Positions 35,761-53,510 of a DNA stretch of 64,000 bases are shown here, piece by piece. Where the stretch lies: assembly GCA_002269645.1 (NCBI GenBank), contig NIVC01003372.1, positions 37,308-101,307 on the forward strand. The letters are read 5' to 3'. Position 1 is the first letter of the stretch. Every line of letters starts with the position of its first letter. The DNA comes from Macrostomum lignano. Taxonomy: Eukaryota. A model generated the notes under the pieces. The model made no database searches. It saw only the letters and a list, made by a program, of their open reading frames with translations, and was not told the origin of the DNA. Position numbers and translations under genes: made by a program.

Positions 35761-38274
35761 TGGTGCGATTGGCCTAGCAACAAACAAGCAGCTGTTCACC
35801 CACAAAAGCTATCCAAGCGCGAGCTTTCTTACTATATATGTACACACTGAGCTGAAATTAGTTTGTACGTACCGCCACTATGAGTTCTGATACACTGACA
35901 TCTGGTGCAACCGTTACGGCCGGGTCTGCCGCTGGTTCCACTTAAGCAGCCGCCTCAAACATCGCTGCTGCAGCCGAAACTGAAGCTGGCTCCGCCAAAG
36001 CTATTTTTTAATTCTTTAATATATGTCGACAATTCTTTTAACATTTAGATCACCGAATTCTGTTAATACATGTTCAGATCTTGTAAAGCTCAACAAAAGC
36101 ACCCATTTGTCATCGCCCTTTTCCAATATTGCTACTCGCATTACTCCCTGTGCAATGGGAGCCACACTCGACGTTTTTGGTGTCGTGTTTTTAGGTTGTT
36201 TATGGGTGAATTTTCCATTTTTAAAAGCATTTTTCGAGTCAATGCAGTTTGTAACATCGGAGCTTCATATATTAAATTGCTGTGATTTCTGGGAGACATT
36301 TTTTCGAGACGATACTGCTCTGTGACAGGGCGGTGTTCAACGTGTGCCATTTTAATTCAATCCTTGATCACAAAGCTTGGAGCAAGTGCCACTAGACTTC
36401 AGTGTCAGGCTTTCAGTTTAAGCAAATAATCCAAAATAATTTTGGCTGTACCATTTTGGACAAACAATGACCAACCCTGTCGAAATCCTGTTGTTTTTAC
36501 AGGTTCTTATATATCTACAAGGAACTGACAGGTGTTTTTTGTTGTTACCGCCAGTTAATTTTTTAAACTACTGCTCTTCATGAAGACGCGTGCAAAAAAT
36601 ACAGATATAAACTTTCATGTTACATACAATTATGACCAGGAGCTTTCCGATTTTAGTTGGTCATATAATTTTGTCGAATACTTGGTTTTGTGTTTCTGGA
36701 GTTATTTCTTAAATAGCATGCGCTCCGCAAAATTTTGTTGATTTAGCTTTACACTCCAGAAGTAAATTTTTCTCAGTGAACTCACATTTTAGTTCGCTCT
36801 TAGTGGTGCAGCTTAAGCATGTTTCGAATGCTCCCAGCAAGCTGCCGAGAGTTCCTGCACTGGCAAGAAAGGACGCTGCCTTGGTGTAGGGCGCTGAAGT
36901 GAACAAAAGTGCGCTCGATCGTCAGCGGTGCACATTTGCTGCATGGGCATTCCGTTTTGTGCTGAGCGGTGACGTACGCTTTTTTGAGGGGTCTGCAGTC
37001 CAGGCGGCGTCATGAAGGAGGGAGTGGGTGCTCCTGCTTCTGAGAAGCCCTCAGAGTACTCTGGAGTGAGAGTTCTGCTTCTCACGTTCGATGTAGTTGA
37101 AAAGTCCCCGAATGCTAGAATATGCACTGTGCCCTTTGACAACCATTGTTATATAAGGTCTTGGTTGCAAGCTTGGTGCTCCTGAATATAGACCAGGAAA
37201 TGTCTGTTAATGGTGTCTTGGTAAAAGTGCTCAAGAGAGAAATCTTCATGCGATTCTGATGAGCGCTCACCAGCTGGTGGGCCATGGGTATTCCGGCTAT
37301 AGTGGTTGCATGGAGCAAACCTGAGGCAGGGGTCTAGCAAGGAAGACTCACTTATTGTGTATTAAAAATTTACGCATATTCATACATGTAGGGTCTAATT
37401 GGGCTTTCAGCAACGCAGGGGAAGCGGCAAAATAAGGGCGGGGGCTCGCAGCAGTCTACTGATTCAGTCGGACTGCTAGTCTGGGGAGCTGTCAAAACAG
37501 CCGATGCGCGGTGCACCAGCTGCCGATGCTGCTTCAACCGCCTACCAACCTGTTCGCGCTGCCAGGAGCGAACTACAAATTAAGTTTTTCCGCTAGATCC
37601 AAGTCATGTGACGAAACCCGGGGGCTGCCTGAGAATATCTGTGTAAACCTCCGGGCTCTAGCGCTGAAAATTACCAGCCGCCATGCATGCCTCACAAGCA
37701 CTTTTCCACCTCTGGATGCTGTTTTGTAGCTGACGTTGCGGTCAAGTTTCAATTATCTCGACAGCGCGGGCCCGGGTTTTTGTTTGTTTGCCGAAGGGCG
37801 TGGCCGCCTCTGCAGTCACCTGTGCAGGAGTACACCCGAAAAACTCGACACTACTAGAAATGGCACGTACATGTAACACTCTAATGGACTCTATGCGAGG
37901 AGGCATACAAGGGATCGGTTTACTTGTAGTCAGTGCTGGAAATGAGGAATGTAAAGACTTTAGCATAAGGGGGATCTTTAGTTGGTGGGCGACTCTATAG
38001 GAAATGAAGGGGTTCCCGGCGGGGACCGGTGGTTCGGCCTCTCGGGAAAACAATAATAAAACAAAGCAACACGCGTTCAAAAACGGGTTCCTTTTTATAA
38101 TTCTCTGAGACACGCGATCACGTGAGCGTGTGATGTGTGACATTGAAGGCCGTGACCTGTCCTTGACCTCCGGTACCAAGCAATCCTGATGAACCCTCCT
38201 GGTGAACTTATCGCAGGTGCCTGCATGGTACGTGAGGAAATAAGGCGAGGCGAAGGCGACCTATGGTAAGATAT

Positions 38275-39144
38275 TGTAGTGCATGCGCCCTTGTCAGTTG
38301 GCAGGGCGCGTTGCACTTTGGGGCTGGTTGGGGGGGTTGGCGGGCGTGGCAGGGTCTGGCCCCGGCCGGGCTTTGCGCGTGCCCCTCCCCAGCCGTGCCC
38401 CTGCCCCGTGCTCAGGGCTGGTTGGCTGCGGCCGGGCCAGCTTTGGCGCGGGTGCAGCCCCTCCCCCCTTAGGCGGGGTTTTGATTGGCTGGGCCGGCGT
38501 GGTTTGTTTTGGTGAGCTTAGCCGGTGGGGCCGTCTGCCCCAGGGTTTGGGTGCTATTTATGGTGCGACTCTGGCTCTTGCCCACCACCTGCGTGCTTTT
38601 TGGTGTTTTGGTGTGCTCCGAGAGTGCAAGCGCGAGACCTGATAAAAGAAACAGCAACATTAGCTACTTGGATAAAAGAAACACAATAGCCTAATTGAGA
38701 AGAGTCTTGGAGAATTAAGAAGAAGTCGGAAACTGCGCTTGAGACCTGCGAATAATAAACGGTGAACAGTCATCTGGCCACTGGTAAGCCGCCTGCTGTT
38801 TGAGTCCTTTCTTTCCGGGAAGCTTGCTAGGCCGAATTCTTGCCAGAGCGTCATAACGCCGGGAGACCATATAGCTTCTGTAGTACGGTACCGTTTACCA
38901 TATATATTGCGTACGCCTTACGGTATAGAGAATAGAAGCACTCGAGAGTGTCACCACACCTCAAGCCGCAGCGTGAACTCTGAGTGTCACAACACCAGAG
39001 GGATCGAATTATTATCGCAGAGCGTCGCCACGCCTGCTCGTCGTATTCATAAAAGTACAGACAGAGCGTCACAACGCCTGTTATTTCACATATAATATAT
39101 ATTGTACTCGGGACTGGGCACCCAAGCCGACCCGGGTTACAACA
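38275..39144 (+). repeat. 5' LTR (870 bp)
   Basis: TGTAGT...TACAACA; AATAAA at 38754-38759; matches 47249-48118 at a constant offset of 8974. Confidence 0.95.
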
Positions 39145-39147
39145 AAT

Positions 39148-39165
39148 TGGCGCCCGAACAGGGAC
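39148..39165 (+). promoter_or_regulatory. Primer-binding site complementary to the 3' end of tRNA-Lys(UUU)
   Basis: TGGCGCCCGAACAGGGAC, 3 nt after the LTR. Confidence 0.92.
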
Positions 39166-39389
39166 CCTGTCCCCAAAGATTGAAAGTCGGCTCAGTTGCT
39201 TTCTATGAAAATTGCTGTCATATTGTGAGCGTTTTTTCTTATTAAAACGACTGTTGCTTATCGCTTGCGGCTATTGCCCTACCGCAAAAGACATTGATCA
39301 CGGTGACAGACAACTGATTGGTTATCAGAGATCGATAGCTATCACCACCTCAGAGTAAAGAGTAGCAACGGTATTCAGTGACTTCGGCC

Positions 39390-40310
39390 ATGGGTGATCA
39401 AGCTATGGACCAACTGATCGATGCGCTGGCTGCGCGCCTCAGAGCCAACGCCGACCGAGCAGCGCCACGACTCTCGAAGCCGCCCAAGTACATACCAACG
39501 ATGAATTTCAGCCTATGGCTGCAGAGTTTCAACGAGTACTGCGAGGCTGTCGGTATAGAAGAAGAAGCCAGGCGGCCGCACCTGATCGGCCTACTCGACC
39601 TCACAACAGCCTACGCTGCCGTTGATAAGCTGGACTTGGCAGACGACATCGAGTACGGGGAATTCACGGATGCACTACTGGCGCGGTTCACCATGAACAG
39701 AACAGCCCAGGACTACCGTTTTGAATTATCGAATCGAGATCAGCTAGACAAGGAGTCTGTGGAGACCTACGGGGACGAGCTGCTGGAGTTGGTGCGCAAT
39801 GCCTTCCCCACCGCGGATGCCGACACCAGGACAGAGCTGGCGAAAGACAGATTTCTAAAAGGCGTTCGAGTAACCGACACTGTCCGAGAAAGACTGTACC
39901 TGCAGCAGCCGGCCAACCTCACCGATGCCATTCGAACAGTAAGACAACTTGAAGCAGCCCAGAAGGCGTCTTCGACCCAGTCCAAAGCCAGACCCAGGGC
40001 TGGGCTGAATGCCTTTGCCACCGAAACGTCGACAGGTGACACCGGCAAAGACGAGGAGCTACGCCAACTGCGTCAAAAAGTAAAGGAAATGGAAGAAAAG
40101 ATCCGACGGATGGAGCAGATGCAGCAGGGCCAGCAGGAGCCGCCCGAACCCGGCCTTCAAGACAAGCAACAATCCAAGCAGGCGGCTCCGTCCAGCTCGA
40201 AGCAGCGTAGCGGTGTCAAGTGCTACAACTGCGGGGAGATAGGCCATCTCTCATTCCAGTGCCCAAAGCCGGGAAAAGGCAAGAGGGGCCCACCAGCTGG
40301 AGGCAAGTGA
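39390..40310 (+). CDS. gag: Gypsy Gag with CCHC zinc knuckle
   Basis: gccATGg start, capsid-like region, and CYNCGEIGHLSFQC. Confidence 0.92.
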   Translation: MGDQAMDQLIDALAARLRANADRAAPRLSKPPKYIPTMNFSLWLQSFNEYCEAVGIEEEARRPHLIGLLDLTTAYAAVDKLDLADDIEYGEFTDALLARFTMNRTAQDYRFELSNRDQLDKESVETYGDELLELVRNAFPTADADTRTELAKDRFLKGVRVTDTVRERLYLQQPANLTDAIRTVRQLEAAQKASSTQSKARPRAGLNAFATETSTGDTGKDEELRQLRQKVKEMEEKIRRMEQMQQGQQEPPEPGLQDKQQSKQAAPSSSKQRSGVKCYNCGEIGHLSFQCPKPGKGKRGPPAGGK

Positions 40311-43300
40311 GCCCCTGCAATTCGTCAGCCTCCGAACAAGCCGTCATCTCATCTCATCATCATCAAACGCCCGGTACCGCATCTCATCAGCCTCCAGTGT
40401 CCGGTACTGCGCCTCATCAGAATCCAGTGTCCGGTACTGCGTCTCATCAGCCTCCAGTGTCCGGTACAGTACCTCATCAGCATCCAGTGTCCGGTACTGC
40501 GGCTCATCAGCATCCAGTGTCCGGTACTGCGCCTCATCAGCATCCAGTGTCCGGTACAGCGTCTCATCAGCCTCCAGTGTCCGGTACTGCGTCTCATCAG
40601 CATCCAGTGTTCGGTACAGTACCTCATCAGCATCCAGTGTCCGGTACTGCGTCTCATCAGCCTCCAGTGTCCGGTACAGTACCTCATCAGCATCCAGTGT
40701 CCGGTACTGCGGCTCATCAGCATCCAGTGTCCGGTACTGCGCCTCATCAGCATCCAGTGTCCGGTACAGCGTCTCATCAGCCTCCAGTGTCCGGTACTGC
40801 GTCTCATCAGCATCCAGTGTTCGGTACAGTACCTCATCAGCATCCAGTGTCCGGTACTGCGTCTCATCAGCCTCCAGTGTCCGGTACAGTATCTCATCAG
40901 CATCCAGTGTCCGGTACTGCGTCTCATCAGCATCCAGTGTCCGGTACTGCGCCTCATCAGCATCCAGTGTCCGGTACTGCGTCTCATCAGCCTCTAGTGT
41001 CCGGTACTGCGTCTCATCAGCCTCCAGTGTCCGGTACTGCGTCTCATCAGCATCCAGTGTCCGGTACAGTGCCTCATCAGCCTCCAGCGTCCGGTACTGC
41101 ACCTCACCATCAACTAGCCGGTTTTGCACAGTCGCAGCGCCCAATCACCGTCAACGCACCTCAGTCAATTCAAATCAATCCTGCGTCGATATATGTTACG
41201 GCCTCAATCGCAGGGCGGAGGGTGAACGCGCTAGTGGACTCGGGAGCTTCCTGCACCATTATCTCACGGGAAGCTTACCAAAGTATGCCGAAACAGAGCG
41301 TCAGAGATTTGGCCGGTGCTGAAGGCTACGTTAGCTTAGCAAACGGCAGCCCGATCGAAATCGAGAGAACAGTCCTGTTGCGACTGTCAATCGCTGATAA
41401 AGTAATAGATACTCCAGCCTTGGTAGTCAGCGGAGTGAAGTACCAACTGGTATTGGGATCCGACTTCTGCAGGGACAACAGTTGCGTCATCGACTACAAG
41501 ACAGCTGTCTTTTCAGTGCAGGACACTGCAATCCCGTTCCGATGGCAAGCTGAGCGCCCGATCGTTTGCAGAATTTTGGCGACAAGGTCCAGCACAATAC
41601 CGCCAGGTCATCAAGCAGTTCTGTCAGCAAGGCTGGAGAGCAAAGGACGACGGAACAGAGGGTGTGTCGGCCTAACTGAGAATCTCGGGGCGAACGATTT
41701 GGCAGCTGGCCGCTGGCTTGCTAAGGCCTTAGTGATCCCAAATAGCGGCAGCCGTCTGCCGACTCGACTCATCAATATCACGGAGGAGCCAGTCAGAATT
41801 CGCCAAGGTTGTACGCTCGGGTGGTTCTGCCCCCTAGAATCCACCGAACCGTTGAACACCATCAAGCTCTTAGCCGTAGAGTCAGGAGACGATCCACAGG
41901 AAGAGCCGAAGGTCCAAGGCAGCAACAGCCCTTCGGAAGCAGACTTGCTACCAAACTCGTACGGCGACTGTGGACTGTCGACGAAAGAAGACGAAGAATT
42001 TAGAATCCTTGTCCGGAGTTACAGCGATGTGTTCACGACCAAGCAGACTTCAAGCAAGTTAACTACCGTGGTGGAGCATGAAATTAACACCGAGAATGCG
42101 CGCCCAATCAAGATCCCACCGCGTCGTCTGCCTCCCCACTTACAGCCAGAAGTAGATCGTCAAGTCAACGAGTTGCTGGAAAAGGGGCAGATCGAAGAAG
42201 CACAGTCACCATGGTGCTTTCCTTTGGTGTGTGTAAAGAAGAAATCAGGGGAAATGAGGATGTGCGTCGATTATCGGAAGTTGAATGAGGTCACCGTCAA
42301 GGATGCAGTGCCGATGCCGAGGGTCGATGATGCGCTGGAGGCAGTACACGGCGCCAAGATCTTCTCGACAATGGACCTTCACAGCGGGTTTTGGCAAGTA
42401 GGGGTGAGACCTCAGGATCAGGACAAGACGGCGTTTGCAGTGCCGCATCGCGGACCATTTCGATGGAAGGTTATGCCGTTCGGCTTAGTGAACAGCCCAG
42501 CAACATTCACCAGGTTGATGGCAGCCGTTCTGGACAAGCAGATATGGAAAACCTGTCTCGTCTACATCGACGATCTACTGGTTTGGTCAACCGACGTGGA
42601 TGAACACCTGAGAAGACTGGAGGAAATATTCAGCAAGTTGCGGCAAGCAAATTTGTGCCTGAAGCCCCAGAAGTGTCACTTTTTGCAAAAGCAAGTGAAA
42701 TTTCTCGGTCACACGCTGTCGGCTGCTGGCATCAGTACCGATGAGGAGAAAGTTCAAGAAGTGAAGAACTGGCCAACACCGCGATCCTCGACGGAGCTGC
42801 ATTCATTCTTGGGCCTGTGTGGCTATTACAGAAAGTTTATTAAAGATTTCGCCGCAATAGCAGCGCCTCTAACTCGATTGACAACAAAAGACGCAAAGTT
42901 TGAATGGAAAACGGAACAGCAGCTGGCGTTCGAAACATTGAAGGAACGAATGACAAGTTCAGAGGTTATGGCTCATCCGGATTTCTCCCCGGATGCCGGA
43001 GAGTTTATCCTCGATACTGATGGCAGTTCGAAGATGGGCATAGGAGCGGTACTTTCTCAAGTCCAGCCAGATGGAGCAGAACGAGTGATCGCCTATGGGT
43101 CCAAGACACTAAATCAAGCCGAACGCAACTATTGTACGACTCGTTTAGAACTACTAGCGGTTGTGACTTTCATCATGAAGTTCAGATACTATCTGCTTGG
43201 AAAAGCGTTCTGTCTGCGAACGGACCACAGCAGCCTGCAATGGTTAAAAAACTTCAGTGACGCCGAGGGACAGGTTGCTCGCTGGTTGGAGAAGTTGGCT

Positions 43301-45007
43301 CCATTTCAGTACCGCATCGTTCACAGACCAGGTCGATCGCATGGCAACGCGGACGCAATGTCGAGGAAGCCAGTACGGAGACATTTCGGAGCGGAGACAT
43401 GCCCGGCATGTGCGCAGCATCCAGAAGGACTAAATGCAGTCGAATTTGAACGATTCTCAGCCGGCAATCTGGCAAGCGAGCAGGATCAAGACGACGATTT
43501 GAGAACAGTAAAGGAAGCGCTTGGCTCAAACCCAGTTCCAGATAAAAGCGAGACAGCTTGGAGTCCACTGGCTAGAGCCGTCTGGACTCGAAAAGACGAC
43601 CTGGTGCTGCAAGAGAACGTGCTCCTTGTGAGAAACAAAGACAGGCGCGATGAGTATCAAATGGTGCTGCCACGAAAGGCATTGGATCGTATCTTGAAAA
43701 CCCTACACGAGGGAGTGGGAGGTGGCCACATGGGCTTTGCGAAGACAAAATTTAAAGTGCTTCAGCGCTACTGGCGTCCAGGATTGTCTCGTGCCATTGA
43801 AGAATATATTCGCGGTTGTGCCACCTGCTGCAAGTCAAAGCCGGGCAAGCGAAACCGAGCACCCCTGCAACCGTTGACATTCGCAGCACCATTCGATTGC
43901 GTCATGATGGACATTGTCGGGCCGCTACCGCGGAGTAAGGCTGGAAACATTTATCTCCTGACAGTCCAAGATTCGTTTACGAAGTGGCCTGACGCGTACC
44001 CGCTTCGCAACCAGAAGGCAAGGACGGTGGCAAGGGCGCTTTTCAATCGATGGATTAGCCAGCATGGGTGTCCGAGTACTTTGCACAGCGACCAAGGAAG
44101 AAACTTCGAATCGCAAGTGATGCGCGAAATGTGCAGGATACTCGAGATCCGCAAGTCCAGAACAACAGCTTATCATCCGAGCGGAAATGGACAAGTAGAA
44201 AACTTCAATAAAAGTTTAAAATCCATCCTCAAGTGCTGCCTAGAGGACTCAGGACGAAACGACTGGGAAGAATTCGTCAGCTCTGCGTTAATGGCGTACC
44301 GATCAAGCGTGCATCGAGCAACGGGTTATACTCCCCACTACATGGTCTATGGCACGGAGATGCGCCTACCGATAGACTTGACTGACCAGCCGCCACAGCC
44401 TGTCGATTCGCATGTAAATTTCGTCAAGGAGCTAGAAGACAAATTGCAGACAGCTCATCGCGCTGCTCGACAGCAGTTGAATACTTATCAGCGGCGACAG
44501 AAGGACCAGTACGATAAAAGAACCCGAGGATCCGATATTCAGGAGGGTGACCATGTCTTCGTCTACAGCCCCGCCCTGAAACCAGACGAAGCCGCAAAGT
44601 TTCACGTAAGCTGGCTCGGCCCAGTGAAGGTGCTCGAAAGAAGATCCGAGGTGCTCTTCAAAGTGGAAAACCCGTCAAATCGTAAAAAGTCGAAGTTCGT
44701 CCACTTCAACAACCTCCGGAAGTTCGCTCGACCGGCCGCCCTGGAAACACCAGTTAGGACCGCGGCACCGCCGGAGGTGGTCGACGAGACGGACTCGGAG
44801 ACAGAGGCGGAATGCGAGACTTGGACTCGGCCTCAACTGATGCCGCCACAGGACGCCGAGGAAGTCGCCGAGGTGCTGGAAGAGCAGATGGAGTTGGTTG
44901 ACGACCCGCAGCCTACTCATAACCCGGTGGAAGCTGCACCTGAGCCTCGAAGGTCCGGAAGGTTGCGACGGCCGCCGGATCGCTACGGCCAGCCAGTGAC
45001 ATTCTAA
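40220..45007 (+). CDS. pol: Gypsy Pol (10-aa repeat tract, aspartic protease, RT, RNase H, integrase); -1 frame relative to gag
   Basis: LVDSGASC (PR); PFGL..SP and YIDD (RT); ILDTDGS, YCTTRLELLAV (RH); H..GGH...C..C, DIVGP, HSDQG, ENFN (IN). Uninterrupted 1595-codon ORF. Confidence 0.97.
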   Translation: MLQLRGDRPSLIPVPKAGKRQEGPTSWRQVSPCNSSASEQAVISSHHHQTPGTASHQPPVSGTAPHQNPVSGTASHQPPVSGTVPHQHPVSGTAAHQHPVSGTAPHQHPVSGTASHQPPVSGTASHQHPVFGTVPHQHPVSGTASHQPPVSGTVPHQHPVSGTAAHQHPVSGTAPHQHPVSGTASHQPPVSGTASHQHPVFGTVPHQHPVSGTASHQPPVSGTVSHQHPVSGTASHQHPVSGTAPHQHPVSGTASHQPLVSGTASHQPPVSGTASHQHPVSGTVPHQPPASGTAPHHQLAGFAQSQRPITVNAPQSIQINPASIYVTASIAGRRVNALVDSGASCTIISREAYQSMPKQSVRDLAGAEGYVSLANGSPIEIERTVLLRLSIADKVIDTPALVVSGVKYQLVLGSDFCRDNSCVIDYKTAVFSVQDTAIPFRWQAERPIVCRILATRSSTIPPGHQAVLSARLESKGRRNRGCVGLTENLGANDLAAGRWLAKALVIPNSGSRLPTRLINITEEPVRIRQGCTLGWFCPLESTEPLNTIKLLAVESGDDPQEEPKVQGSNSPSEADLLPNSYGDCGLSTKEDEEFRILVRSYSDVFTTKQTSSKLTTVVEHEINTENARPIKIPPRRLPPHLQPEVDRQVNELLEKGQIEEAQSPWCFPLVCVKKKSGEMRMCVDYRKLNEVTVKDAVPMPRVDDALEAVHGAKIFSTMDLHSGFWQVGVRPQDQDKTAFAVPHRGPFRWKVMPFGLVNSPATFTRLMAAVLDKQIWKTCLVYIDDLLVWSTDVDEHLRRLEEIFSKLRQANLCLKPQKCHFLQKQVKFLGHTLSAAGISTDEEKVQEVKNWPTPRSSTELHSFLGLCGYYRKFIKDFAAIAAPLTRLTTKDAKFEWKTEQQLAFETLKERMTSSEVMAHPDFSPDAGEFILDTDGSSKMGIGAVLSQVQPDGAERVIAYGSKTLNQAERNYCTTRLELLAVVTFIMKFRYYLLGKAFCLRTDHSSLQWLKNFSDAEGQVARWLEKLAPFQYRIVHRPGRSHGNADAMSRKPVRRHFGAETCPACAQHPEGLNAVEFERFSAGNLASEQDQDDDLRTVKEALGSNPVPDKSETAWSPLARAVWTRKDDLVLQENVLLVRNKDRRDEYQMVLPRKALDRILKTLHEGVGGGHMGFAKTKFKVLQRYWRPGLSRAIEEYIRGCATCCKSKPGKRNRAPLQPLTFAAPFDCVMMDIVGPLPRSKAGNIYLLTVQDSFTKWPDAYPLRNQKARTVARALFNRWISQHGCPSTLHSDQGRNFESQVMREMCRILEIRKSRTTAYHPSGNGQVENFNKSLKSILKCCLEDSGRNDWEEFVSSALMAYRSSVHRATGYTPHYMVYGTEMRLPIDLTDQPPQPVDSHVNFVKELEDKLQTAHRAARQQLNTYQRRQKDQYDKRTRGSDIQEGDHVFVYSPALKPDEAAKFHVSWLGPVKVLERRSEVLFKVENPSNRKKSKFVHFNNLRKFARPAALETPVRTAAPPEVVDETDSETEAECETWTRPQLMPPQDAEEVAEVLEEQMELVDDPQPTHNPVEAAPEPRRSGRLRRPPDRYGQPVTF
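40271..40316 (+). promoter_or_regulatory. Putative -1 ribosomal frameshift signal (G GGA AAA plus downstream stem-loop)
   Basis: In-phase X XXY YYZ heptamer at 40271-40277 in the gag/pol overlap; aggggc-c-cac (40284-40293) pairs with gtg-a-gcccct (40307-40316). Confidence 0.65.
40372..41110 (+). repeat. Coding 30-bp minisatellite (~24 x SGT(A/V)(S/P/A)HQ(P/H)PV) at the start of the Pol frame
   Basis: Directly visible; includes a 210-bp block duplication (40441 versus 40651). Confidence 0.95.
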
Positions 45008-45421
45008 TGGGTTACTCGTCATCGTGAAGTCTCATCAGTTTCATATGCGATTATCGTTAAAAGCCAGAAAAATATTTCGCGAATGCGTCATTCATCATAA
45101 ATACGAGTACTTCATCAATGCATCATTCATCATGAGTACGAGCAGTTCGCCAATGCGTCATTCAAGAAATTCGTTAATGCGTCATTAAGTCATTTTAATC
45201 GCATCTTCATCGAAGTTTTGACGAGAATCAAATTTTGCCTACAAAATCTATGCATCGGTGGAGGGTATTCGGACTGGCATCCGGTGAAAACTCGAATTGG
45301 CGCTGGGACTTTACGATGCAGGGCCACGGTCCGAGGAGATGACGCTCTGGCAAGAGGGGAGCAGGAGTAAAATCTGGAGTCAGGGACAGTGTGTCGCAGG
45401 TTTGAGTACGTTGCTTTGCAG

Positions 45422-46369
45422 ATGGATTTGTACGCTGTCCTCCAAGTCGGACACACAGCCGAACGTGCCGAGATCAGGCGAGTCTATCGACAGCTAGCGC
45501 TCTTCTGGCACCCGGACAAGCACCCGGACAAGGAACTCGCAGGACGCCGTTTCCAAGAAATTGAGACTGCTGGTAGAATTCTATCGTGTCCATATCGCCG
45601 AGCGATGTACGACCAGTTGGGCGATAAATCAATCCCGTATGACGAGGCTGTAACCTTCGCAATGACGTTCATACCTCCTACTGGTGTAAGAATGCCGGCG
45701 GACATCGAAGAGGGAGTACAGCAAAGGCGAGAAGTTGAAGAAGCTCAGCGCAAGGAAGCTGGTCTCAGGCAGGGGAGACAGGGACAGAGGAACGATTACG
45801 AAGCGGATGGCTACATTCTAATCTCGGACGACGATGAGAGCGAGGAGTCGGATGAGTGTAGCATCGACACAGAAGAAGAAGACGAGTTGCTGGCATCGGA
45901 TGGCTCCTCCGGAAGTAGTGAGTCAGAAGCTATGGAGATCGATGTACCGGAAAGCAAGGAGGTTGTCTCACATCGCGCGTCGGGAGCAATATGGGATGAT
46001 GAAAAGCTGTCGTTATCGGCAGCTGCGCGTCAGCTCCGCCATCGTTTGATGAAGCATATTTTGGCTGGACAGTCGGACGGAATCGTGTCAGTGCTCACGG
46101 CTATGAGACGGCTGTTTCGAGACTCACAGCGAGAACCGAGGAGCGCACTGTCAGTGGTCCTGCTGCAGGCGTTGTTCTTCATCCGCAGAGATATCGCTCC
46201 GGTAAAGCGTCAGAGAGCAGGCCGCCGTTACTGGTCTAGGCAGAGTTTTGATTGTTTCGTCCGACAGCTCTGTCACGAGCTCATCCCGCTGTTCGGTTTG
46301 CGCCGGCCCGGCAGGCTGCTCGAGGTCCTGAAAAGCTGCGTCGGTCTCCCTGGACTTCGGGTTCGCTAG
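45422..46369 (+). CDS. Retrotransposon ORF3: N-terminal DnaJ/Hsp40 J-domain (HPD), acidic Ser/Glu/Asp linker, basic helical C-terminal region
   Basis: DLYAVLQV...AEIRRVYRQLALFWHPDKHPDKELAGRRFQEIETAGRILS...RRAMYD matches the J-domain consensus (DYY.ILGV...EIKKAYRKLAL..HPDKNP...A...F.EI..AY.VLSD...R..YD). It lies between the pol stop and the PPT. Confidence 0.88.
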   Translation: MDLYAVLQVGHTAERAEIRRVYRQLALFWHPDKHPDKELAGRRFQEIETAGRILSCPYRRAMYDQLGDKSIPYDEAVTFAMTFIPPTGVRMPADIEEGVQQRREVEEAQRKEAGLRQGRQGQRNDYEADGYILISDDDESEESDECSIDTEEEDELLASDGSSGSSESEAMEIDVPESKEVVSHRASGAIWDDEKLSLSAAARQLRHRLMKHILAGQSDGIVSVLTAMRRLFRDSQREPRSALSVVLLQALFFIRRDIAPVKRQRAGRRYWSRQSFDCFVRQLCHELIPLFGLRRPGRLLEVLKSCVGLPGLRVR

Positions 46370-46489
46370 GGTGCCCAGTTCCGATTCATACTGTATTTTC
46401 TGCTTACTTGTATGTATGTTGTTACGCTCGTACTGTATGGGTTTATTTGCATGCTAGTGGGGTCAAGCTTCCTGGGGGAATGGCTCAGC

Positions 46490-46990
46490 AGCTGTGCGGC
46501 GGCCACGTGCGCTTCCTGCCGGCTTCTGCGGCGGCCACGTGCGCTTCCTGCCGGCTTCTGCGGCGGCCACCTGCGCTTCCTGCCGGCTTCTGCGGCGGCC
46601 ACCTGCGCTTCCTGCCGGCTTCTGCGGCGGCCACCTGCGCTTCCTGCCGGCTTCTGCGGCGGCCACCTGCGCTTCCTGCCGGCTTCTGCGGCGGCCACGT
46701 GCGCTTCCCGCCCGGCCATCTGCGCGCCTCGCCCGGCCGCCTTCGCGTCTTGCCGGCCACCTGCGTGCCCTGCTGGCCATCTGCGCGTCCTGTCGGCAAC
46801 CTGCGCTTCCTGCCCGGCCATCTGCGCGTCCTGTCGGCAACCTGCGCTTCCCGCCCGGCCATCTGCGCTTCCTGTCGGCAACCTGCGCTTCCCGCCCGGC
46901 CATCTGCGCTTCCTGCCGGCCACCTGCGTGTCCTGTCGGCAACTTGCGCGTCCCGCCCGGCCATCTGCTCGTCCTGCCGGCCGCCTGCGA
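46490..46990. repeat. GC-rich tandem repeats (~33-bp cttcctgccggcttctgcggcggccacctgcg and related units) in the retroelement 3' region
   Basis: Directly visible. Confidence 0.85.
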
Positions 46991-47236
46991 TGGTTTTCTG
47001 TGCCGCCAGCTTTGAAAGCCTATTCCGTGCCCCGTGGTTGCTCCTGACGAACTCGCGTGCAGAATACTAGTACCTTTTTCATATTTCTCTTGCGGCAACC
47101 TTTTTTTTGCTTTTCCCTGTTGCATTAGTTTGTTCCCAATTTTTTTGTTGTTTTTGATAGTTTATTTCGCTTTGTTATTTCAAAATTTTTTGTCCCAGTC
47201 GCCGTGGTTCGAGCTCCGCCCTGTTTTTTTTTTTGT

Positions 47237-47248
47237 AGGAGGGGAGGG
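47237..47248 (+). promoter_or_regulatory. Polypurine tract
   Basis: AGGAGGGGAGGG immediately before the 3' LTR TG, preceded by a T-run. Confidence 0.9.
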
Positions 47249-48118
47249 TGTAGTGCATGCGCCCTTGTCAGTTGGCAGGGCGCGTTGCACTTTGGGGCTG
47301 GTTGGGGGGGTTGGCGGGCGTGGCAGGGTCTGGCCCCGGCCGGGCTTTGCGCGTGCCCCTCCCCAGCCGTGCCCCTGCCCCGTGCTCAGGGCTGGTTGGC
47401 TGCGGCCGGGCCAGCTTTGGCGCGGGTGCAGCCCCTCCCCCCTTAGGCGGGGTTTTGATTGGCTGGGCCGGCGTGGTTTGTTTTGGTGAGCTTAGCCGGT
47501 GGGGCCGTCTGCCCCAGGGTTTGGGTGCTATTTATGGTGCGACTCTGGCTCTTGCCCACCACCTGCGTGCTTTTTGGTGTTTTGGTGTGCTCCGAGAGTG
47601 CAAGCGCGAGACCTGATAAAAGAAACAGCAACATTAGCTACTTGGATAAAAGAAACACAATAGCCTAATTGAGAAGAGTCTTGGAGAATTAAGAAGAAGT
47701 CGGAAACTGCGCTTGAGACCTGCGAATAATAAACGGTGAACAGTCATCTGGCCACTGGTAAGCCGCCTGCTGTTTGAGTCCTTTCTTTCCGGGAAGCTTG
47801 CTAGGCCGAATTCTTGCCAGAGCGTCATAACGCCGGGAGACCATATAGCTTCTGTAGTACGGTACCGTTTACCATATATATTGCGTACGCCTTACGGTAT
47901 AGAGAATAGAAGCACTCGAGAGTGTCACCACACCTCAAGCCGCAGCGTGAACTCTGAGTGTCACAACACCAGAGGGATCGAATTATTATCGCAGAGCGTC
48001 GCCACGCCTGCTCGTCGTATTCATAAAAGTACAGACAGAGCGTCACAACGCCTGTTATTTCACATATAATATATATTGTACTCGGGACTGGGCACCCAAG
48101 CCGACCCGGGTTACAACA
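47249..48118 (+). repeat. 3' LTR (870 bp)
   Basis: Matches the 5' LTR; followed by TSD ATAT. Confidence 0.95.
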
Positions 48119-49946
48119 ATATCAACGAGTGGACTGGCGTGTATCACCGCGCCGGCCTACTGGTGCGTCCAAGCGACCTGTTGCGCTGTCGGCGACTCCA
48201 GCTGGCAGGTCATATCATCCGTGCTGAATCGTACTGGCCATAGCCGGTGCAGGAGGTCCTGCTGCTGATGCTGCAGGCACCGGCCCTACCGGCGGGGACA
48301 GGCGCGCACTCGGCGTTTCGTCGACTGCCTGCTGGCTGACGCCGGCGCCCCGGACTCTGCCGCCGGAGCGGCCTATGTTCGCACTCTGGCCTTGAGACGC
48401 GCCCTGTGACACTAGAGACTATCCAGTGTACTTTTGTTGTTTGTTGTTGTTGGCCTTGAGGCGCGCCGTGTGACGCTAACTGCGTATTCTGTTGTTGTTG
48501 TTCTGGTTATGCTATCTGTTATCTGGTTCTGGCTATGCCGTTTGGCGTGTACCTATAAAAAACCCGGATCAGCCGCTAGTTTTGTTCAGGGGAGCTCGAC
48601 CATGCACTAATCAAGCATACACTATCAACAGCCGAGAGTGTTCAGCTAAATTACAGCAGGATGCATACTATAGAGAGCGAGTTCTAGGGAGTCTTCACTG
48701 GAATCTGTTGTTTATAGTATATAGCTCGTACTTTTAGTACTTTATATAGTAATTGTCAGATACATAATATTGATTAATATTGTTAATGCAAATAGCTGTG
48801 CGTATCCCTTTCTAGAGAGTTCAATAAATATCCAATACAGTATCGTACCGATATATCTATGGTTGTTAGTTCATATCGCAAATACGCTAATACTTTAAGT
48901 GCCCCCCAAACTGCTCAATTTTTCATATTGTGTATTTCTTTTTGTTCAAACTGATAAAATATACTTAATTAAAAGAAGCAAATTTCAACAGAATGAATGT
49001 GTAATCGCTTGTACTTCGTACGTACGTATGGTCAAGTCACTTGGCTATATCCTGTTACATGTAATTTCTAGCTCATGTAACTGTAATATGATGTATGGGA
49101 TGTACGTATATGATAAATGTGTAGATCACAGTTTGTGAGTTCCACAAGTCATAAATAATGTTACCAATATGGCATGATAAACATGGCAATGTACATGTAT
49201 GCGCCTTATTGTAGGTAGAAACTGTGGTTCAGGTATATTCTATTGTATGTCAATACATTTTGCACTTACATGTATAGTCGGAGTTCACGTCCTGGAAAGC
49301 AATTACTCGTAGCACATGTGCATGAAGCTGTGATTCTTATTTTAAAGAAGATTCTTAACCAAATTTCTAAACAGTCCAGAGGTGCACGCACTAAATTCAG
49401 GGAACGGCAGGAGTCGCATGCGGACGTCCGTTCTGTCTTCCGTGTACTTCTACATGTACGATTAATATAAGAAATTCCATTGAAGCCATTCAGAATCGCT
49501 TCCGTACTTTATTGGTGCCCTCTCAAGTGCTAATGACCCCTCCTCGCTACGCCCCAACATTGGCACCTACACAGAACACACTAACACCTAACCTCATCTT
49601 TTAATGAGTTGCATAGCGCTATGCGTGATGAAGTACTGTACGAGTAACGCAGGTTACTATCGAAAATAATCTCAAAATTCTATCCCTTTTCTAACAGCCC
49701 GAAATACATTAACTCGATCCACGTATCGATCCACGTACTCGATATACGTAATTGTATGTGGCGCTTTCATCAATAAGGCTTTTTAGCATGTCCTAGTTTT
49801 TTTAACAAACGAACTAAATTAAGTTTATTAGAACATACTTAAGGTCTTAAAAATAGCGTTATACAGCTATATTCCCCTAGTACAGGAAGTTCCCAAAGCA
49901 CTTCTCTGGCTAGAGTTGGCGCCAGAGGAACTCGCTAAGATGAGAC

Positions 49947-50812: not shown

Positions 50813-51539
50813 CTCCTCGCCTCTGCCAAAATTAGATATGGCTTGTCAATGCATGGCTTTTGTGTTATGGCTATTGGTGACTTGTGAAACCTCACTAACG
50901 GTGATCGGTACTAATGCGTGTATATGTGCATGCATAGAGTACATGAGCAAGAAACTAACAAGTTATGGATAAAAGTAGAGCAAGGGTAAAAGGTACGGAT
51001 AAACAAAGTTAAAAAATTGACTGTAAATAAAGCTAACAGGAACTGTCAATGATACGAATTTCCATTTGCTGACAGCTCAAGACAAAATCCTTTCAACGAC
51101 CGTTCCATTCTGAGCTAACTTTGATACGATCACCGCATTGCTGAAGGTTATGGTACGCTTTGCACCGACTGTAGCGTTGTTCGAGGCGGCTGCTTAGGCA
51201 GAACCAGCGGCAGTCCCGGCCGCAGCAGCGTTCTTCGAGGCGGAGACCAAAGCAAAGGTGCCAATAGGACAGCAGCTGGGCTTCACCGGTAGCTATTTCT
51301 GAAGGAAGAATGTGCTTTCAATAAGCTGTGCTGCTTGGTACTAATACGAGACTAGTTTTAGCAGAGGGCGGAGAAGCAGGGTACAGCAGATAGCAGAGAG
51401 GGCAGAGCAGGAAGCAAAGCCGTGCGGACAGAGCAGAAGGCAGAAAACCAGGAGGCAGAGCAGGAGAGAAAGAGCAAGGAGGCAGAGCCACTGGTCAAGA
51501 GTGAGGGAAGCCATGGGTCAGTAGAGGAAGCCATGGGTC

Positions 51540-53510
51540 AGGAGAGAGGGAAACAAGGGTCAGGAGTGAGGGAATCCAGGGTTCAGGAGAGAGGGAGCCA
51601 TGGGTCAGGAGGGAGGGAAGCCAGGGGGTCAGGAGGGAGGGAAACAAGGGTCAGGAGGGAGAGAAGCCAGGGTCAGGGGAGGGAAGCCAGGGTCAGGGGG
51701 AGAGAAGCCAGGGTCAGGGGAAGGAAGCCAGGGTCAGTAAGGAGAAAAGCCAGGGTCAGGGGGAGAGAAGCCAGAGTCAGGGGAAGGAAGCCAGGGTCAG
51801 GATAGGGAAGCCAGGGTCGGGGGAGAGAAGCCAGGGTCAGGGGAGAGAAGCCAGGGTCGGGGGAGAGAAGCTAGGGTCAGGGGAGGGAAGCCAAGGTCTG
51901 GGGAAGGAAGCCAGGGTCAGGGCAGGGAAGCTAGGGTCAGGGGAAGAAAGAAGCCAGGGTCAAGGGAGGGAAGCCAGGGTCAGGACAGGGAAGCCAGGGT
52001 CAGGGGAGAGAAGCCAGGGGTTAGTAAGGAGAAAAGCCAGGCCAGGCAGAGAGAAGCCAGGGTCAGGGGAGAGAAGCCAGGGTCAGGGGAGAGAAGCTAG
52101 GGTCAAGGGAGGGAAGCCAGGGTCAGGGGAGGAGAGAAGCCAGGGTCAGGGGAGGGAAGCCAGGGTCACGGGAGGGAAGCCAGGGTCAGGGGGGAGAAGC
52201 CAGGGTCAGGGGAGGGAAGCCAGGGTCAGGGGGAGAAGCCAGGGTCAGGGGAGGGAAGCCAGGGTCAGGGGAGGGAAGCCAGGGTCGAGGAGGGAAGCCA
52301 GGGTCAGGGGGGAGAAGCCAGGGTCAGGGGAGGGAAGCCAGGGTCAGGGGGGAGAAGCCAGGGTCAGGGGAAGGAAGCCAGGGTCAGGGGAGAGAAGCCA
52401 GGGTCAGGGGAGGGAAGCCAGGGTCAGGGGAGGGAAGCCAGGGTCAGGGGAGGGAAGCCAGGGTCAAGGGAGGGAAGCCAGGGTCAGGGGAGGAGAGAAG
52501 CCAGGGTCAGGGGAGGGAAGCCAGGGTCACGGGAGGGAAGCCAGGGTCAGGGGGGAGAAGCCAGGGTCAGGGGAGGGAAGCCAGGGTCAGGGGGGAGAAC
52601 CCAGGGTCAGGGGAGGGAAGCCAGGGTCAGGGGAGGGAAGCCAAGGTCGAGGAGGGAAGCCAGGGTCAGGGGGAGAGAAGCCAGGGTCAGGGGAGAGAAG
52701 CCAGGGTCAGGGGAGGGAAGCCAGGGTCGGGGAGGGAAGCTAGGGTCAGGGGGAGAGAAGCTAGGGTCAAGGGGAGAGAAGTCAGGGTCAGGGGAAGGAA
52801 GCCAGGGTCAGGGGAGGGAAGCCAGGGTCAAGGGAGGGAAGCCAGGGTCAGGAGAGGGAAGCCAGGGTCAGGGGAGGGAAGCCAGGGTCAGGGGAGAGAA
52901 GCCAGGGCCAAGTGGAGAGAAGCCAGGGTCGAGGGTTGTGAAGCCAGGGTCAGGGGAAGGAAGCCAGGGTCAGAGAGGAGAGAAGCCAGGGTCAGGGGAG
53001 GAGAAAAGCCAGGGTCAGGGAAGGGAAGCCAGGGTCAGGGGAGTGAAGCCAGGGTCAGGGAGGAGAGAAGCCAGGGGTCAGTAAGGAGAGAAGCCAGGGT
53101 CAGGGGGAGGGAAGCCAAGGTCAGGAGAGGGAAGCCAAGGATTAGGAAGGAGGGAAGCCAGGGGTCAGGGGGAGAGAAGCCAGGGTCAGGGGAGGGAAGC
53201 CAGGGTCAGGGGAGGGAAGCTAGGGTCAGGGGGAGAAGCCAGGGTCAGGGGGAGAAGCCAGGGTCAGGGGAGGGAAGCCGGGGCCAAGTAGAGAGAAGCC
53301 AGGGTCAGGGGAAGGAAGCCAGGGTCAGGGGAAGGAAGCCAGGGTCAGGGGAGGGAAGCCAGGGTCAGGGGAAGGAAGCCAGGGTCAGGGAGGAGAGAAG
53401 CCAGGGGTCAGGGGAGGAGAAAAGCCAGGGTCAGGGAAGGGAAGCCAGGGTCAGGGGAGTGAAGCCAGGGTCAGGGAGGAGAGAAGCCAGGGGTCAGTAA
53501 GGAGAGAAGC
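51540..53510 (+). repeat. G-rich ~21-23-bp tandem repeat (agccagggtcaggggagggaag) inside the right TIR
   Basis: About 2 kb, versus about 0.6 kb for the homologous array in the left TIR. Confidence 0.95.

What the first reader, a model, noticed from the sequence alone, without database searches (positions are those of the whole stretch)
45422..46369. Gypsy retrotransposon carrying a DnaJ/Hsp40 J-domain gene in the env position
Seen: an intact ~315-aa ORF between the pol stop (45007) and the PPT, inside a complete element with matching LTRs and TSD. Its first ~65 aa form a textbook J-domain with the HPD tripeptide, followed by an acidic S/E/D linker and a basic helical region, with no signal peptide or TM segment, so it is not an env. 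Established: J-domains stimulate Hsp70 ATPase through HPD, and some viruses use their own (polyomavirus T antigens) or captured ones (pestivirus Jiv/DNAJC14 inserts). I am not aware of J-domain ORFs being a recognised Ty3/Gypsy accessory gene, but I could not search. Inference: the element encodes its own Hsp70 co-chaperone, perhaps for Gag/VLP assembly or uncoating, or to interfere with chaperone-dependent Piwi/Argonaute loading.
Basis: partly seen in the sequence, partly recalled or inferred. Interest (0 to 1): 0.92.

Follow-up and report, generated by a model that had tools for sequence, protein, structure and literature searches.

The report
Flatworm retrotransposon encodes its own J-domain co-chaperone
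A young, complete Ty3/gypsy retrotransposon of the flatworm Macrostomum lignano carries, where an envelope gene would sit, a conserved third gene for an Hsp40-type J-domain protein, and a whole clade of related elements shares it, which I did not find described for any retrotransposon.

Summary
Window 38275-48118 is a complete 9.8-kb Ty3/gypsy element with identical 870-bp LTRs, a 4-bp duplication, and intact gag, pol and ORF3. The host is Macrostomum lignano (pol 99% identical to an annotated protein). ORF3 (45422-46369, 315 aa) has four regions:
- a full-length J domain with HPD (PF00226, E=5.5e-18; modelled fold matches solved J domains at 1-2 Å);
- a disordered acidic linker;
- a basic five-helix C-terminal domain with no match in Pfam or to any natural PDB protein;
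- no membrane segment, so it is not an env.

ORF3 is present in all five copies examined and intact in three. Homologous J-domain ORF3s follow pol in at least seven other lineages. The five lineages with near-full-length pol are monophyletic (200/200 bootstraps). A related element outside that group has no ORF3. Between lineages dN/dS is 0.18-0.48 or less.

A YAG acceptor-like site lies directly before the ATG in 5 of 8 lineages, which suggests a spliced or trans-spliced mRNA. One lineage adds an HP1-like chromodomain and one has lost HPD.

The best reading is an element-encoded adaptor that recruits host Hsp70, possibly to a nuclear or chromatin target. That target is inferred only. I found no report of this in the searchable literature.

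The parts
38271..38274 (+). 5' copy of the 4-bp target-site duplication (ATAT)
   Evidence: Read directly from the sequence. The same 4 bases follow the 3' LTR at 48119-48122.
38275..39144 (+). 5' LTR (870 bp, TG...CA)
   Evidence: Identical to the 3' LTR base for base. No canonical heat-shock element in it.
39148..39165 (+). Primer-binding-site-like 18-mer, 3 nt after the LTR
   Evidence: Read directly. The tRNA partner was not tested: no tRNA gene was found in the window or in loci L001-L006.
39390..40310 (+). gag, taken from the first ATG of ORF 39378-40310; has a CCHC zinc knuckle
   Evidence: Pfam zf-CCHC 7.7e-8, with weak Retrotrans_gag and PNMA matches. Intact.
40271..40277 (+). GGGAAAA slippery heptamer in the gag/pol overlap, in phase for a -1 frameshift
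   Evidence: pol is in the -1 frame relative to gag and the two overlap by 91 nt. Frameshifting itself is inferred.
40220..45007 (+). pol. An in-frame 10-aa tandem repeat (40352-41100) is followed by protease (41195-41467), RT (42233-42718), RNase H (42905-43306), integrase (43670-44179) and the integrase C-terminal domain (44618-44719)
   Evidence: Pfam matches in gypsy order. Repeat. Intact. 99% identical to M. lignano PAA55822.1.
45008..45421 (+). pol-ORF3 spacer, ending in a pyrimidine-rich CAG (45419-45421) directly before the ORF3 ATG; a candidate 3' splice or trans-splice acceptor
   Evidence: AG abuts the ATG in 5 of 8 lineages and lies within 2 nt in 7 of 8. The background for ATGs in these elements is 10% and 25%. 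The spacer has 3 in-frame stops, so read-through from pol is unlikely.
45422..46369 (+). ORF3, a 315-aa J-domain protein. J domain 45425-45613, HPD 45509-45517, acidic disordered linker about 45782-46006, SUMO-interaction-like ILISDDD 45815-45835, conserved basic five-helix C-terminal domain about 46007-46339
   Evidence: C-terminal domain homology. It has no match in Pfam or to any natural PDB protein.
46495..46989 (+). GC-rich tandem repeats (32-bp and about 20-bp units) in the 3' untranslated part. The ORFs listed here on both strands are repeat artefacts
   Evidence: Length varies between copies.
47237..47248 (+). Polypurine tract abutting the 3' LTR
   Evidence: Read directly.
47249..48118 (+). 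3' LTR
48119..48122 (+). 3' copy of the target-site duplication (ATAT)

Best explanation
ORF3 is a real, selectively maintained accessory gene of a Macrostomum-associated clade of Ty3/gypsy retrotransposons. It was acquired once at the base of that clade.

It encodes a class-C (type III) J-domain protein. Its parts are an N-terminal J domain with an HPD loop and a basic helix II, a disordered acidic linker, and a family-specific basic five-helix C-terminal domain.

By the established logic of J-domain proteins, the C-terminal domain and the linker motifs bind a particular target. The J domain then docks host Hsp70 and triggers its ATPase, so that Hsp70 is loaded onto that target and remodels it. 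That logic is established knowledge and was not tested here.

The protein is most likely made from a subgenomic mRNA, by cis-splicing or spliced-leader trans-splicing at a YAG acceptor directly in front of its ATG (inferred).

I think the most likely target is a nuclear, chromatin-associated step. It could be the element's own integration complex or the host's heterochromatin-type silencing. I give that part of the statement only about 0.35-0.4.
For: Shown here:
- The J domain is complete and canonical.
- ORF3 is present in 5 of 5 insertions of the family. They lie at different genomic sites and three are fully intact.
- Within the family, ORF3 diverges as slowly as pol (0.2-0.5%). The non-repetitive non-coding DNA next to it differs by up to about 8%.
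- Homologous ORF3s with a J domain, an acidic linker and the same C-terminal domain sit directly after pol in L005, L006 (both M. lignano), L007, L008 (a JGI metagenome), L009 and L011. They are also found on L010 and in P0155 and P0157.
- HPD is kept in 7 of the 8 lineages whose J region is known.
- dN is 0.42-0.84 with dS saturated, so dN/dS is at most 0.18-0.48.
- The J-carrying elements are monophyletic in a pol tree (200/200 bootstraps). The outgroup element L092 has only about 47 nt between pol and its 3' LTR.
- The C-terminal domain has only five relatives among 1.84 billion representative proteins, and all five are ORF3s.
- The YAG-before-ATG enrichment has a binomial P of about 5e-4.
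- In M. lignano 38.8% of genes are trans-spliced and about 7% of transcription units are polycistronic precursors (PMC5730564).

Pointers to a nuclear or chromatin target:
- The L006 lineage has an HP1-type chromodomain inside ORF3 (Pfam 9e-9; best PDB matches CBX5, Swi6, HP1 and Rhino).
- A hydrophobic-core-plus-acidic motif occurs in 5 of 9 sequences, against 0.48 expected from shuffles.
- The C-terminal domain has pI 11.6.
Against: - No expression, protein or interaction data were available. Splicing is inferred from sequence alone, and no strong consensus donor (G|GTRAG) was found in the leader or the start of gag of five elements.
- The L005 lineage keeps a long intact ORF3 but has lost HPD, and its J domain is only marginal in Pfam (E=2e-3). 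Hsp70 stimulation is therefore dispensable in at least one lineage, unless that copy is decaying.
- Within the family the few substitutions are 1 synonymous to 6 non-synonymous. That is what neutral decay after insertion gives, but it adds no support.
- The SUMO-interaction reading rests on a pattern chosen after seeing the sequences and on my memory of such motifs.
- The chromodomain keeps only two of the three usual cage aromatics, and it occurs in one lineage only.
- The hosts of the Logan and JGI contigs are unknown, so the taxonomic breadth is uncertain.
Confidence: 0.62

Rival explanations
1. ORF3 uses the same Hsp70-recruiting mechanism, but the client is the element's own machinery in the cytoplasm. 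It would help Gag or particle assembly or disassembly, or the folding and priming competence of reverse transcriptase.
For: - The J domain is canonical.
- The C-terminal domain co-diverges with pol and is found only in these elements. That fits a partner encoded by the element itself.
- From my own knowledge, not tested here: hepadnaviral reverse transcriptase needs host Hsc70 and Hsp40, and polyomavirus assembly and uncoating use J proteins.
Against: - Nothing in the sequence points to Gag or RT binding.
- The chromodomain in the L006 lineage and the very basic C-terminal domain fit a chromatin or nucleic-acid setting better.
- The close outgroup relative L092 has a similar gag and pol and manages without ORF3, so the function is not a core replication need.
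Confidence: 0.22
2. The conserved C-terminal domain carries the main function, for example nucleic-acid binding, RNA export or packaging, or targeting. The J domain would be an accessory or regulatory module that is not required, so the protein is not primarily an Hsp70 co-chaperone.
For: - The L005 lineage keeps a 507-aa intact ORF3 in a young element (LTRs 99.85% identical) although HPD is gone.
- The C-terminal domain has seven invariant positions across eight lineages and pI 11.6.
- Another LTR retrotransposon, Cer1, is reported to use an extra protein for genomic RNA export (PMC10309623, title and abstract listed).
Against: - The J domain is the best conserved part of ORF3. Mean pairwise identity is 49%, against 32% for the C-terminal domain and 23% for the linker.
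- HPD and the basic helix II are kept in 7 of 8 lineages.
Confidence: 0.1
3. ORF3 interferes with chaperone-dependent small-RNA loading of Argonaute or Piwi proteins.
For: Only general knowledge that Argonaute and Piwi loading uses Hsp70/Hsp90 with co-chaperones, recalled from memory. No result obtained here speaks for it specifically.
Against: No domain or motif of ORF3 relates to Argonaute or Piwi. The chromodomain variant points to chromatin rather than to cytoplasmic loading complexes.
Confidence: 0.04
4. ORF3 is a passenger: a host DNAJ fragment transduced by chance, with no function for the element.
For: LTR retrotransposons do pick up host sequences. The M. lignano annotation in NCBI calls no gene at ORF3.
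Against: - ORF3 is conserved in position, architecture and reading frame across at least eight lineages whose synonymous sites are saturated.
- The carriers are monophyletic.
- No close host paralogue was found: the best non-element J domains are 40-50% identical over 21% of the protein.
- Constraint equals that on pol within the family.
Confidence: 0.02

Closest known systems
Polyomavirus large and small T antigens (virus-encoded N-terminal J domain)
   Same: Both are selfish genetic elements that encode their own N-terminal J domain with HPD, joined to target-binding modules. That arrangement directs host Hsc70 onto chosen complexes. This is the closest analogue for how ORF3 probably works (established knowledge, from memory).
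   Different: There is no homology beyond the J domain. T antigens belong to a DNA virus, not a retroelement, and carry helicase and Rb-binding modules. ORF3 has an orphan helical domain. No polyomavirus protein appeared among the listed structural matches.
J-domain proteins of large DNA viruses, phages and baculoviruses
   Same: These are element-encoded stand-alone J proteins. They are the only viral structural matches to the ORF3 model, and the match is over the J domain alone (BFVD: mimivirus-like viruses, Cafeteria roenbergensis virus, tailed phages, a baculovirus J domain protein).
   Different: All listed hits whose virus is named are large DNA viruses or phages, and none is a reverse-transcribing element. 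The regions outside the J domain are unrelated.
Env-carrying Ty3/gypsy elements (errantiviruses) and their spliced ORF3
   Same: Both have a third ORF after pol and before the polypurine tract. In errantiviruses it is expressed from a spliced subgenomic RNA. The acceptor-like YAG in front of ORF3 suggests the same expression logic.
   Different: ORF3 has no signal peptide, no membrane segment and no glycoprotein fold. The flatworm errantiviruses described in PMC13524379 carry gB-type env in gag-env-pol order.
Additional ORFs of LTR retrotransposons (plant aORFs, bdelloid rotifer ORF3s, orchid AlkB demethylase domain, C. elegans Cer1 CERV)
   Same: This is the same general phenomenon: a lineage of LTR elements fixes an extra host-derived gene or domain that serves its life cycle (PMC7264820, PMC5408684, PMC9289625, PMC10309623; listed).
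   Different: None of these is a J-domain protein. 'DnaJ', 'J-domain' and 'chaperone' do not occur in PMC5408684 or PMC6338049.
Chromoviruses (chromodomain at the integrase C-terminus)
   Same: These are gypsy elements that use an HP1-like chromodomain to reach heterochromatin. The L006-lineage ORF3 carries such a domain.
   Different: Here the chromodomain sits in the J-domain accessory protein, not in integrase, and only in one lineage. The window's pol has no chromodomain hit.
Heat-responsive LTR retrotransposons of M. lignano (Ustyantsev et al. 2025, PMC12801592)
   Same: The host and the superfamily are the same. Both are links between LTR elements and the heat-shock system.
   Different: Those families carry heat-shock elements in their LTRs. 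This family has none. That paper does not mention a DnaJ or J-domain ORF.

Membership tests
J-domain protein (Hsp40/DnaJ superfamily, PF00226) | J-domain sequence signature over its full length | tested here: met
   PF00226 E=5.5e-18, profile positions 1-63 of 63. 50 solved J domains match.
J-domain protein (Hsp40/DnaJ superfamily, PF00226) | HPD tripeptide in the loop between helices II and III, and a basic helix II | tested here: met
   HPD is at aa 30-32 and helix II reads IRRVYRQ. HPD is kept in 7 of 8 lineages and lost in L005.
J-domain protein (Hsp40/DnaJ superfamily, PF00226) | Four-helix J fold | tested here: met
   The model has pLDDT about 85. Foldseek gives rmsd 1.0-1.8 Å and TM (target) 0.7-0.9 to solved J domains, including 5nro_B bound to DnaK.
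J-domain protein (Hsp40/DnaJ superfamily, PF00226) | Stimulates the ATPase of an Hsp70 partner | not testable with these tools
   This is a biochemical property, inferred from the conserved HPD and helix II only.
Class A or class B Hsp40 (DnaJA/DnaJB) | G/F-rich region, with or without a zinc-finger domain, and the DnaJ C-terminal client-binding domains after the J domain | tested here: not met
   No Pfam hit other than PF00226 in ORF3, even at E<=1 for aa 67-315. By exclusion ORF3 is class C (type III).
Ty3/gypsy (Metaviridae) LTR retrotransposon | Paired LTRs with TG...CA ends, a target-site duplication, a primer-binding site and a polypurine tract | tested here: met
   The tRNA that would pair with the primer-binding site was not identified.
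Ty3/gypsy (Metaviridae) LTR retrotransposon | gag with a CCHC knuckle and pol in the order protease, RT, RNase H, integrase | tested here: met
   The nearest relatives are gypsy-type pol proteins of flatworms, cnidarians, sponges and arthropods.
Mag clade of Ty3/gypsy (the commonest clade in M. lignano according to PMC12801592) | Placement with Mag reference elements in an RT or pol tree | not tested
   The tools hold no reference sequences of the named clades. A canonical CCHC knuckle argues against CsRN1, and the normal domain order argues against Gmr1. Both arguments rest on my memory of those clades.
Errantivirus-type env ORF3 | Signal peptide, transmembrane anchor and a fusion-glycoprotein domain | tested here: not met
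   The highest 19-residue hydropathy is 1.45. No glycoprotein family matches. The model is all-helical plus disorder.
Chromovirus | Chromodomain at the C-terminus of integrase | tested here: not met
   No Chromo hit in the window's pol. A chromodomain occurs only inside ORF3 of the L006 lineage.

The most novel reading that the evidence does not exclude
The ORF3 protein is a transposon-encoded counter-silencing factor. Its chromodomain or SUMO-interaction-like motifs and its basic C-terminal domain would bring it to H3K9-methylated, SUMO-dependent heterochromatin at the element's own copies. Its J domain would then load host Hsp70 there to take repressive complexes apart. This would be a retroelement analogue of the way polyomavirus T antigen uses Hsc70 to dismantle Rb-E2F complexes. 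It would be the first chaperone-based anti-silencing gene of a retrotransposon.
Probability: 0.13. Interest if true: 0.92.

Novelty: new variant of a known kind. Interest (0 to 1): 0.72.

Why it matters
Ty3/gypsy elements are usually described as gag-pol machines that take all their chaperoning from the host. The extra genes known so far are envelopes and a handful of enzymes or orphan ORFs.

This case is a clade that has kept its own J-domain protein through enough time to saturate synonymous sites. That shows control over where host Hsp70 acts can be a selectable trait for a retroelement, as it is for some DNA viruses.

It also offers a compact natural example of the 'J domain plus targeting module' design. 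The targeting module is an orphan domain that evolves alongside an identifiable genetic parasite. One variant carries an HP1-like chromodomain that hints at the site of action.

M. lignano is a laboratory model with genome, transcriptome and trans-splicing data, so the expression and localisation questions can be answered with existing or routine descriptive data.

There is also a practical point for annotation. The NCBI annotation calls no gene at ORF3 in the loci examined, and UniProt holds it only inside chimeric models auto-named 'J domain-containing protein'. Such entries should not be counted as host DNAJ genes.

Tried and rejected
- Protein search with ORF3 alone and with a five-lineage profile against 5.8 billion proteins. 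Only weak J-domain hits came back, plus one chimeric M. lignano model. The known ORF3 relatives were not returned, so these searches say little about distribution.
- Metagenome scan with an ORF3 profile. All 80 loci were ordinary J proteins matching aa 1-95 (two up to aa 160), and none had gag or pol nearby. This was a dead end.
- Structure prediction from the single sequence was too poor to use (pLDDT 51).
- Fold searches were dominated by the J domain. No domain-only model could be made, so the fold of the C-terminal domain remains uncompared. Profile searches of that domain gave nothing meaningful: PDB sequences returned only designed helical bundles, and Pfam returned only inconsistent weak hits.
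- Heat-shock elements in the LTR, which would have tied the element to the heat-inducible families of PMC12801592. There are none. The only match in the window lies inside pol and is at chance level.
- Read-through or fusion with pol. This is rejected: there are at least 3 in-frame stops wherever the frames coincide, and the frames differ in two lineages.
- A consensus cis-splice donor in the leader or the start of gag was not found with a strict pattern. Trans-splicing, or a weak or distant donor, remains open.
- Within-family dN/dS. There are too few substitutions (7), and they look like post-insertion decay, so it is uninformative.
- tRNA partner of the primer-binding site. No tRNA genes are in the available DNA.
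- Rfam scan of the window gave no hits.
- Identity of the sequencing runs behind the Logan contigs was not found in the literature library.
Full report
**1. What is in the window**

- Two 870-bp direct repeats, 38275-39144 and 47249-48118, are identical base for base. They begin with TG and end with CA, and are flanked by the same four bases, ATAT.
- Three bases after the 5' repeat lies an 18-nt primer-binding-site-like sequence. A purine run abuts the 3' repeat.
- Three uninterrupted reading frames lie between the repeats:
  - gag, 39390-40310, with a CCHC knuckle.
  - pol, 40220-45007, in the -1 frame. A GGGAAAA heptamer sits in the right phase in the 91-nt overlap. Pfam finds protease, RT, RNase H and integrase in gypsy order.
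  - ORF3, 45422-46369.
- The element is therefore a complete, very young Ty3/gypsy retrotransposon of 9,844 bp.
- Its pol is 99% identical to a Macrostomum lignano protein, PAA55822.1. The window is therefore flatworm DNA. It is rich in minisatellites and also carries an intact hAT transposase gene.

**2.

- PF00226 matches residues 2-64 over the whole profile (E=5.5e-18), and HPD is at residues 30-32.
- Fifty solved J domains match by sequence. The closest are DNAJB2, DNAJB6, DNAJB8 and bacterial DnaJ, and nothing else in the PDB matches.
- A model built from a five-sequence alignment has pLDDT about 85 over the J domain. It superposes on solved J domains at 1.0-1.8 Å, including one bound to DnaK.
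- Residues 120-193 are predicted disordered, and residues 126-190 are very acidic (pI 4.1).
- Residues 191-315 are very basic (pI 11.6). Residues 200-306 form five helices at pLDDT 74-94.
- There is no hydrophobic segment and no second Pfam domain. ORF3 is therefore not an env, and it is a class-C J protein by exclusion.

**3. Is the gene real? Copies of the same family**

- Four further insertions of the family were retrieved from the M. lignano assembly GCA_002269645.1 (L001-L004). Their flanks do not match the window's, so they are separate insertions.
- All four carry ORF3 at 99.6-99.8% nucleotide identity.
- Of the five copies, ORF3 is intact in three. One copy has a single frameshift and one has lost its stop codon. 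Two copies also have a pol broken by frameshift, and one of those has a frameshifted gag that is also cut by the contig end.
- Against the three more diverged copies, ORF3 differs at 0.2-0.5% of sites, the same as pol (0.2-0.5%).
- In the same comparisons the spacer differs at 0.7-1.2%, and the non-repetitive stretch before the 3' LTR differs at 3.6-8.4%.
- The seven variable ORF3 sites are mostly non-synonymous. This is expected for decay after insertion and is uninformative.

**4. Is the gene real? Other lineages**

This is the decisive evidence. The two next-closest M. lignano families and two contigs of one JGI metagenome each have an ORF that starts with a J domain 75-468 nt after pol.

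| Locus | pol identity to window | ORF3 length | Pfam DnaJ E-value | Note |
|---|---|---|---|---|
| L006 | 55% | 325 aa | 4.7e-16 | also has a chromodomain |
| L007 | 57% | 264 aa | 4.7e-19 | |
| L008 | 51% | more than 364 aa | 7.8e-16 | cut by the contig end |
| L005 | 50% | 507 aa | 2e-3 (marginal) | HPD lost |

- L005 and L006 are themselves young elements, with LTRs 99.85% and 99.76% identical.
- The similarity is not limited to the J domain. The C-terminal region aligns significantly (L008 against the window, E=2.7e-6; L007 against the window, 29% identity over 275 residues).
- An exhaustive HMMER search with the C-terminal 131 residues against 1.84 billion representative proteins found five relatives, and all are ORF3s:
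  - a chimeric M. lignano gene model, UniProt A0A1I8G8I7, auto-named 'J domain-containing protein';
  - four proteins from Logan and JGI assemblies.
- Two of the four are full-length J-linker-C-terminal proteins, P0154 and P0156. A cluster mate of a third, P0157, is an intact 336-aa sister of the window's ORF3.
- Where the contigs reach far enough upstream, the integrase end of a related pol lies in front of the gene (L009, L011).
- Across lineages the J domain is the best conserved part (49% mean pairwise identity). The C-terminal domain follows at 32%, with seven invariant positions, and the linker is at 23%.
- Synonymous sites are saturated while dN is 0.42-0.84, so dN/dS is at most 0.18-0.48.

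**5. One acquisition**

- A neighbour-joining tree was built from 1,041 pol columns. The five elements with near-full-length pol and a J-domain ORF3 form one clade in 200 of 200 bootstraps.
- Its sister group includes L092 and a sea-anemone element.
- L092 has 46-47% pol identity and an unknown host. It has LTRs at 4637-4762 and 10218-10343, and only about 47 nt between its pol stop and the 3' LTR, so it has no ORF3.
- The simplest history is a single capture at the base of the Macrostomum-associated clade, followed by vertical descent with the element.
- The capture is old. The best J domains outside the elements are only 40-50% identical.

**6. How ORF3 is probably expressed (inference)**

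- ORF3 cannot be a read-through product. At least three stops separate it from pol wherever the frames agree, and the frames differ in two lineages.
- In all eight lineages with known upstream sequence, an AG preceded by a moderately pyrimidine-rich stretch (47-80% pyrimidines) lies within 4 nt of the ATG. It abuts the ATG as YAG|ATG in five lineages and lies within 2 nt in seven.
- For all ATGs inside these elements the corresponding frequencies are 10% and 25%, giving a binomial P of about 5e-4.
- The pyrimidine at -3 is not a Kozak-type context. It is what a 3' splice site looks like.
- I found no strong consensus donor in the leaders.
- M. lignano trans-splices 38.8% of its genes and resolves polycistronic precursors this way (PMC5730564). 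Either cis-splicing from a weak donor or spliced-leader trans-splicing of the full-length RNA would fit.

**7. What it probably does (inference)**

- It is established knowledge that a J domain with HPD and a basic helix II docks on Hsp70 and triggers ATP hydrolysis. The remainder of a J protein decides where this happens.
- ORF3 has exactly that layout, so the most likely mechanism is targeted recruitment of host Hsp70.
- Three observations hint at the target:
  - The L006 lineage has an HP1-type chromodomain between the J domain and the C-terminal domain (Pfam 9e-9). Its best solved relatives are CBX5, Swi6, HP1 and Rhino, and two of the three cage aromatics are kept.
  - At about the same place, five of nine sequences have a short hydrophobic core followed by an acidic, serine-rich run, for example ILISDDDESEES in the window. 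Composition-preserving shuffles give 0.48 such sequences on average and never five. From memory this resembles phospho-regulated SUMO-interaction motifs. The pattern was defined after looking at the sequences and is only a lead.
  - The C-terminal domain is strongly basic.
- Together these favour a nuclear, chromatin-linked site of action: either the integration complex or heterochromatin-type silencing. I give this about 0.35-0.4.
- The alternative is that the client is the element's own particle or polymerase. That remains plausible.
- The L005 lineage, intact but without HPD, warns that the C-terminal domain may have a function of its own.

**8. Comparison with what is known**

- Stand-alone or N-terminal J domains are known in DNA viruses. 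The structural search against viral models returned only giant-virus, phage and baculovirus J proteins. Polyomavirus T antigens are the classical case (from memory).
- Extra ORFs in LTR retrotransposons are known too (env, plant aORFs, rotifer ORF3s, an orchid demethylase domain, Cer1 CERV).
- I found no paper that reports a J-domain gene in an LTR retrotransposon.
- The term is absent from each of the following:
  - the 2025 survey of M. lignano LTR retrotransposons;
  - the DARTS paper;
  - the rotifer ORF3 paper;
  - the accessory-domain review;
  - the 2026 metazoan errantivirus survey.
- Repbase and GyDB could not be consulted, so an unpublished database annotation cannot be excluded.
- I therefore class the finding as a new variant of known kinds, not a new kind of system.

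**9. Limits**

- There are no expression, protein or interaction data.
- The hosts of the non-M. lignano contigs are unknown.
- The tree is a distance tree.
- The fold of the C-terminal domain could not be searched on its own.
- Membership of the Mag clade was not tested.

Noticed in passing
L006:12953-13930 (chromodomain about 13400-13550): In a sister family in M. lignano the J-domain ORF3 also contains an HP1-type chromodomain (Pfam PF00385, 9e-9). Its closest solved relatives are CBX5, Swi6, HP1 and Rhino.
   Followed up: partly
L005:13979-15502: The most basal J-ORF3 lineage has grown to 507 aa and lost the HPD tripeptide, with only a marginal Pfam DnaJ match. It nevertheless sits intact in a young element whose LTRs are 99.85% identical.
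   Followed up: partly
window 40352-41100: The N-terminal part of pol, before the protease, holds 25 in-frame copies of a 30-bp unit, giving a 10-aa proline- and histidine-rich repeat. The copy number differs between insertions of the family.
   Followed up: partly
window 46495-46989: GC-rich tandem repeats (32-bp and about 20-bp units) fill much of the stretch between ORF3 and the polypurine tract and vary in length between copies. They create several spurious long ORFs on both strands.
   Followed up: partly
window 60228-62798 (- strand): An intact 856-aa ORF has hAT-transposase hallmarks (DUF4371 and the hAT C-terminal dimerisation domain). It may be a second, unrelated and potentially active transposon in the window.
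   Followed up: no
window 34803-35455 and 51503-53547: Two minisatellite arrays have 20-bp units that are reverse complements of each other. They lie about 3 kb on either side of the retrotransposon. The whole window is unusually dense in minisatellites, for example 226 copies of a 21-bp unit at 13864-18579.
   Followed up: no
window 28974-29690 (+ strand): A 238-aa ORF has a sub-threshold rhodopsin-family GPCR match (7tm_1, E=1.2e-5). It is probably a host exon or a pseudogene fragment.
   Followed up: no
P0149 (Logan contig of 6.2 kb, not in the window): This 653-aa protein joins an N-terminal J domain to D5-type primase-helicase domains (PF19263, PF08706). The J-domain-plus-replicative-helicase layout recalls polyomavirus large T antigen, but it sits in an unrelated mobile element or virus.
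   Followed up: no
UniProt A0A1I8G8I7 (P0152) and A0A1I8HEH7 (P0151): These M. lignano gene models are auto-named 'J domain-containing protein'. They are chimeras that contain retrotransposon ORF3 pieces, joined to integrase or LTR-derived sequence. In the loci examined, the NCBI annotation of the genome calls no gene at ORF3.
   Followed up: partly
window 40271-40277: A GGGAAAA heptamer lies in the gag/pol overlap, in the correct phase for -1 ribosomal frameshifting.
   Followed up: no
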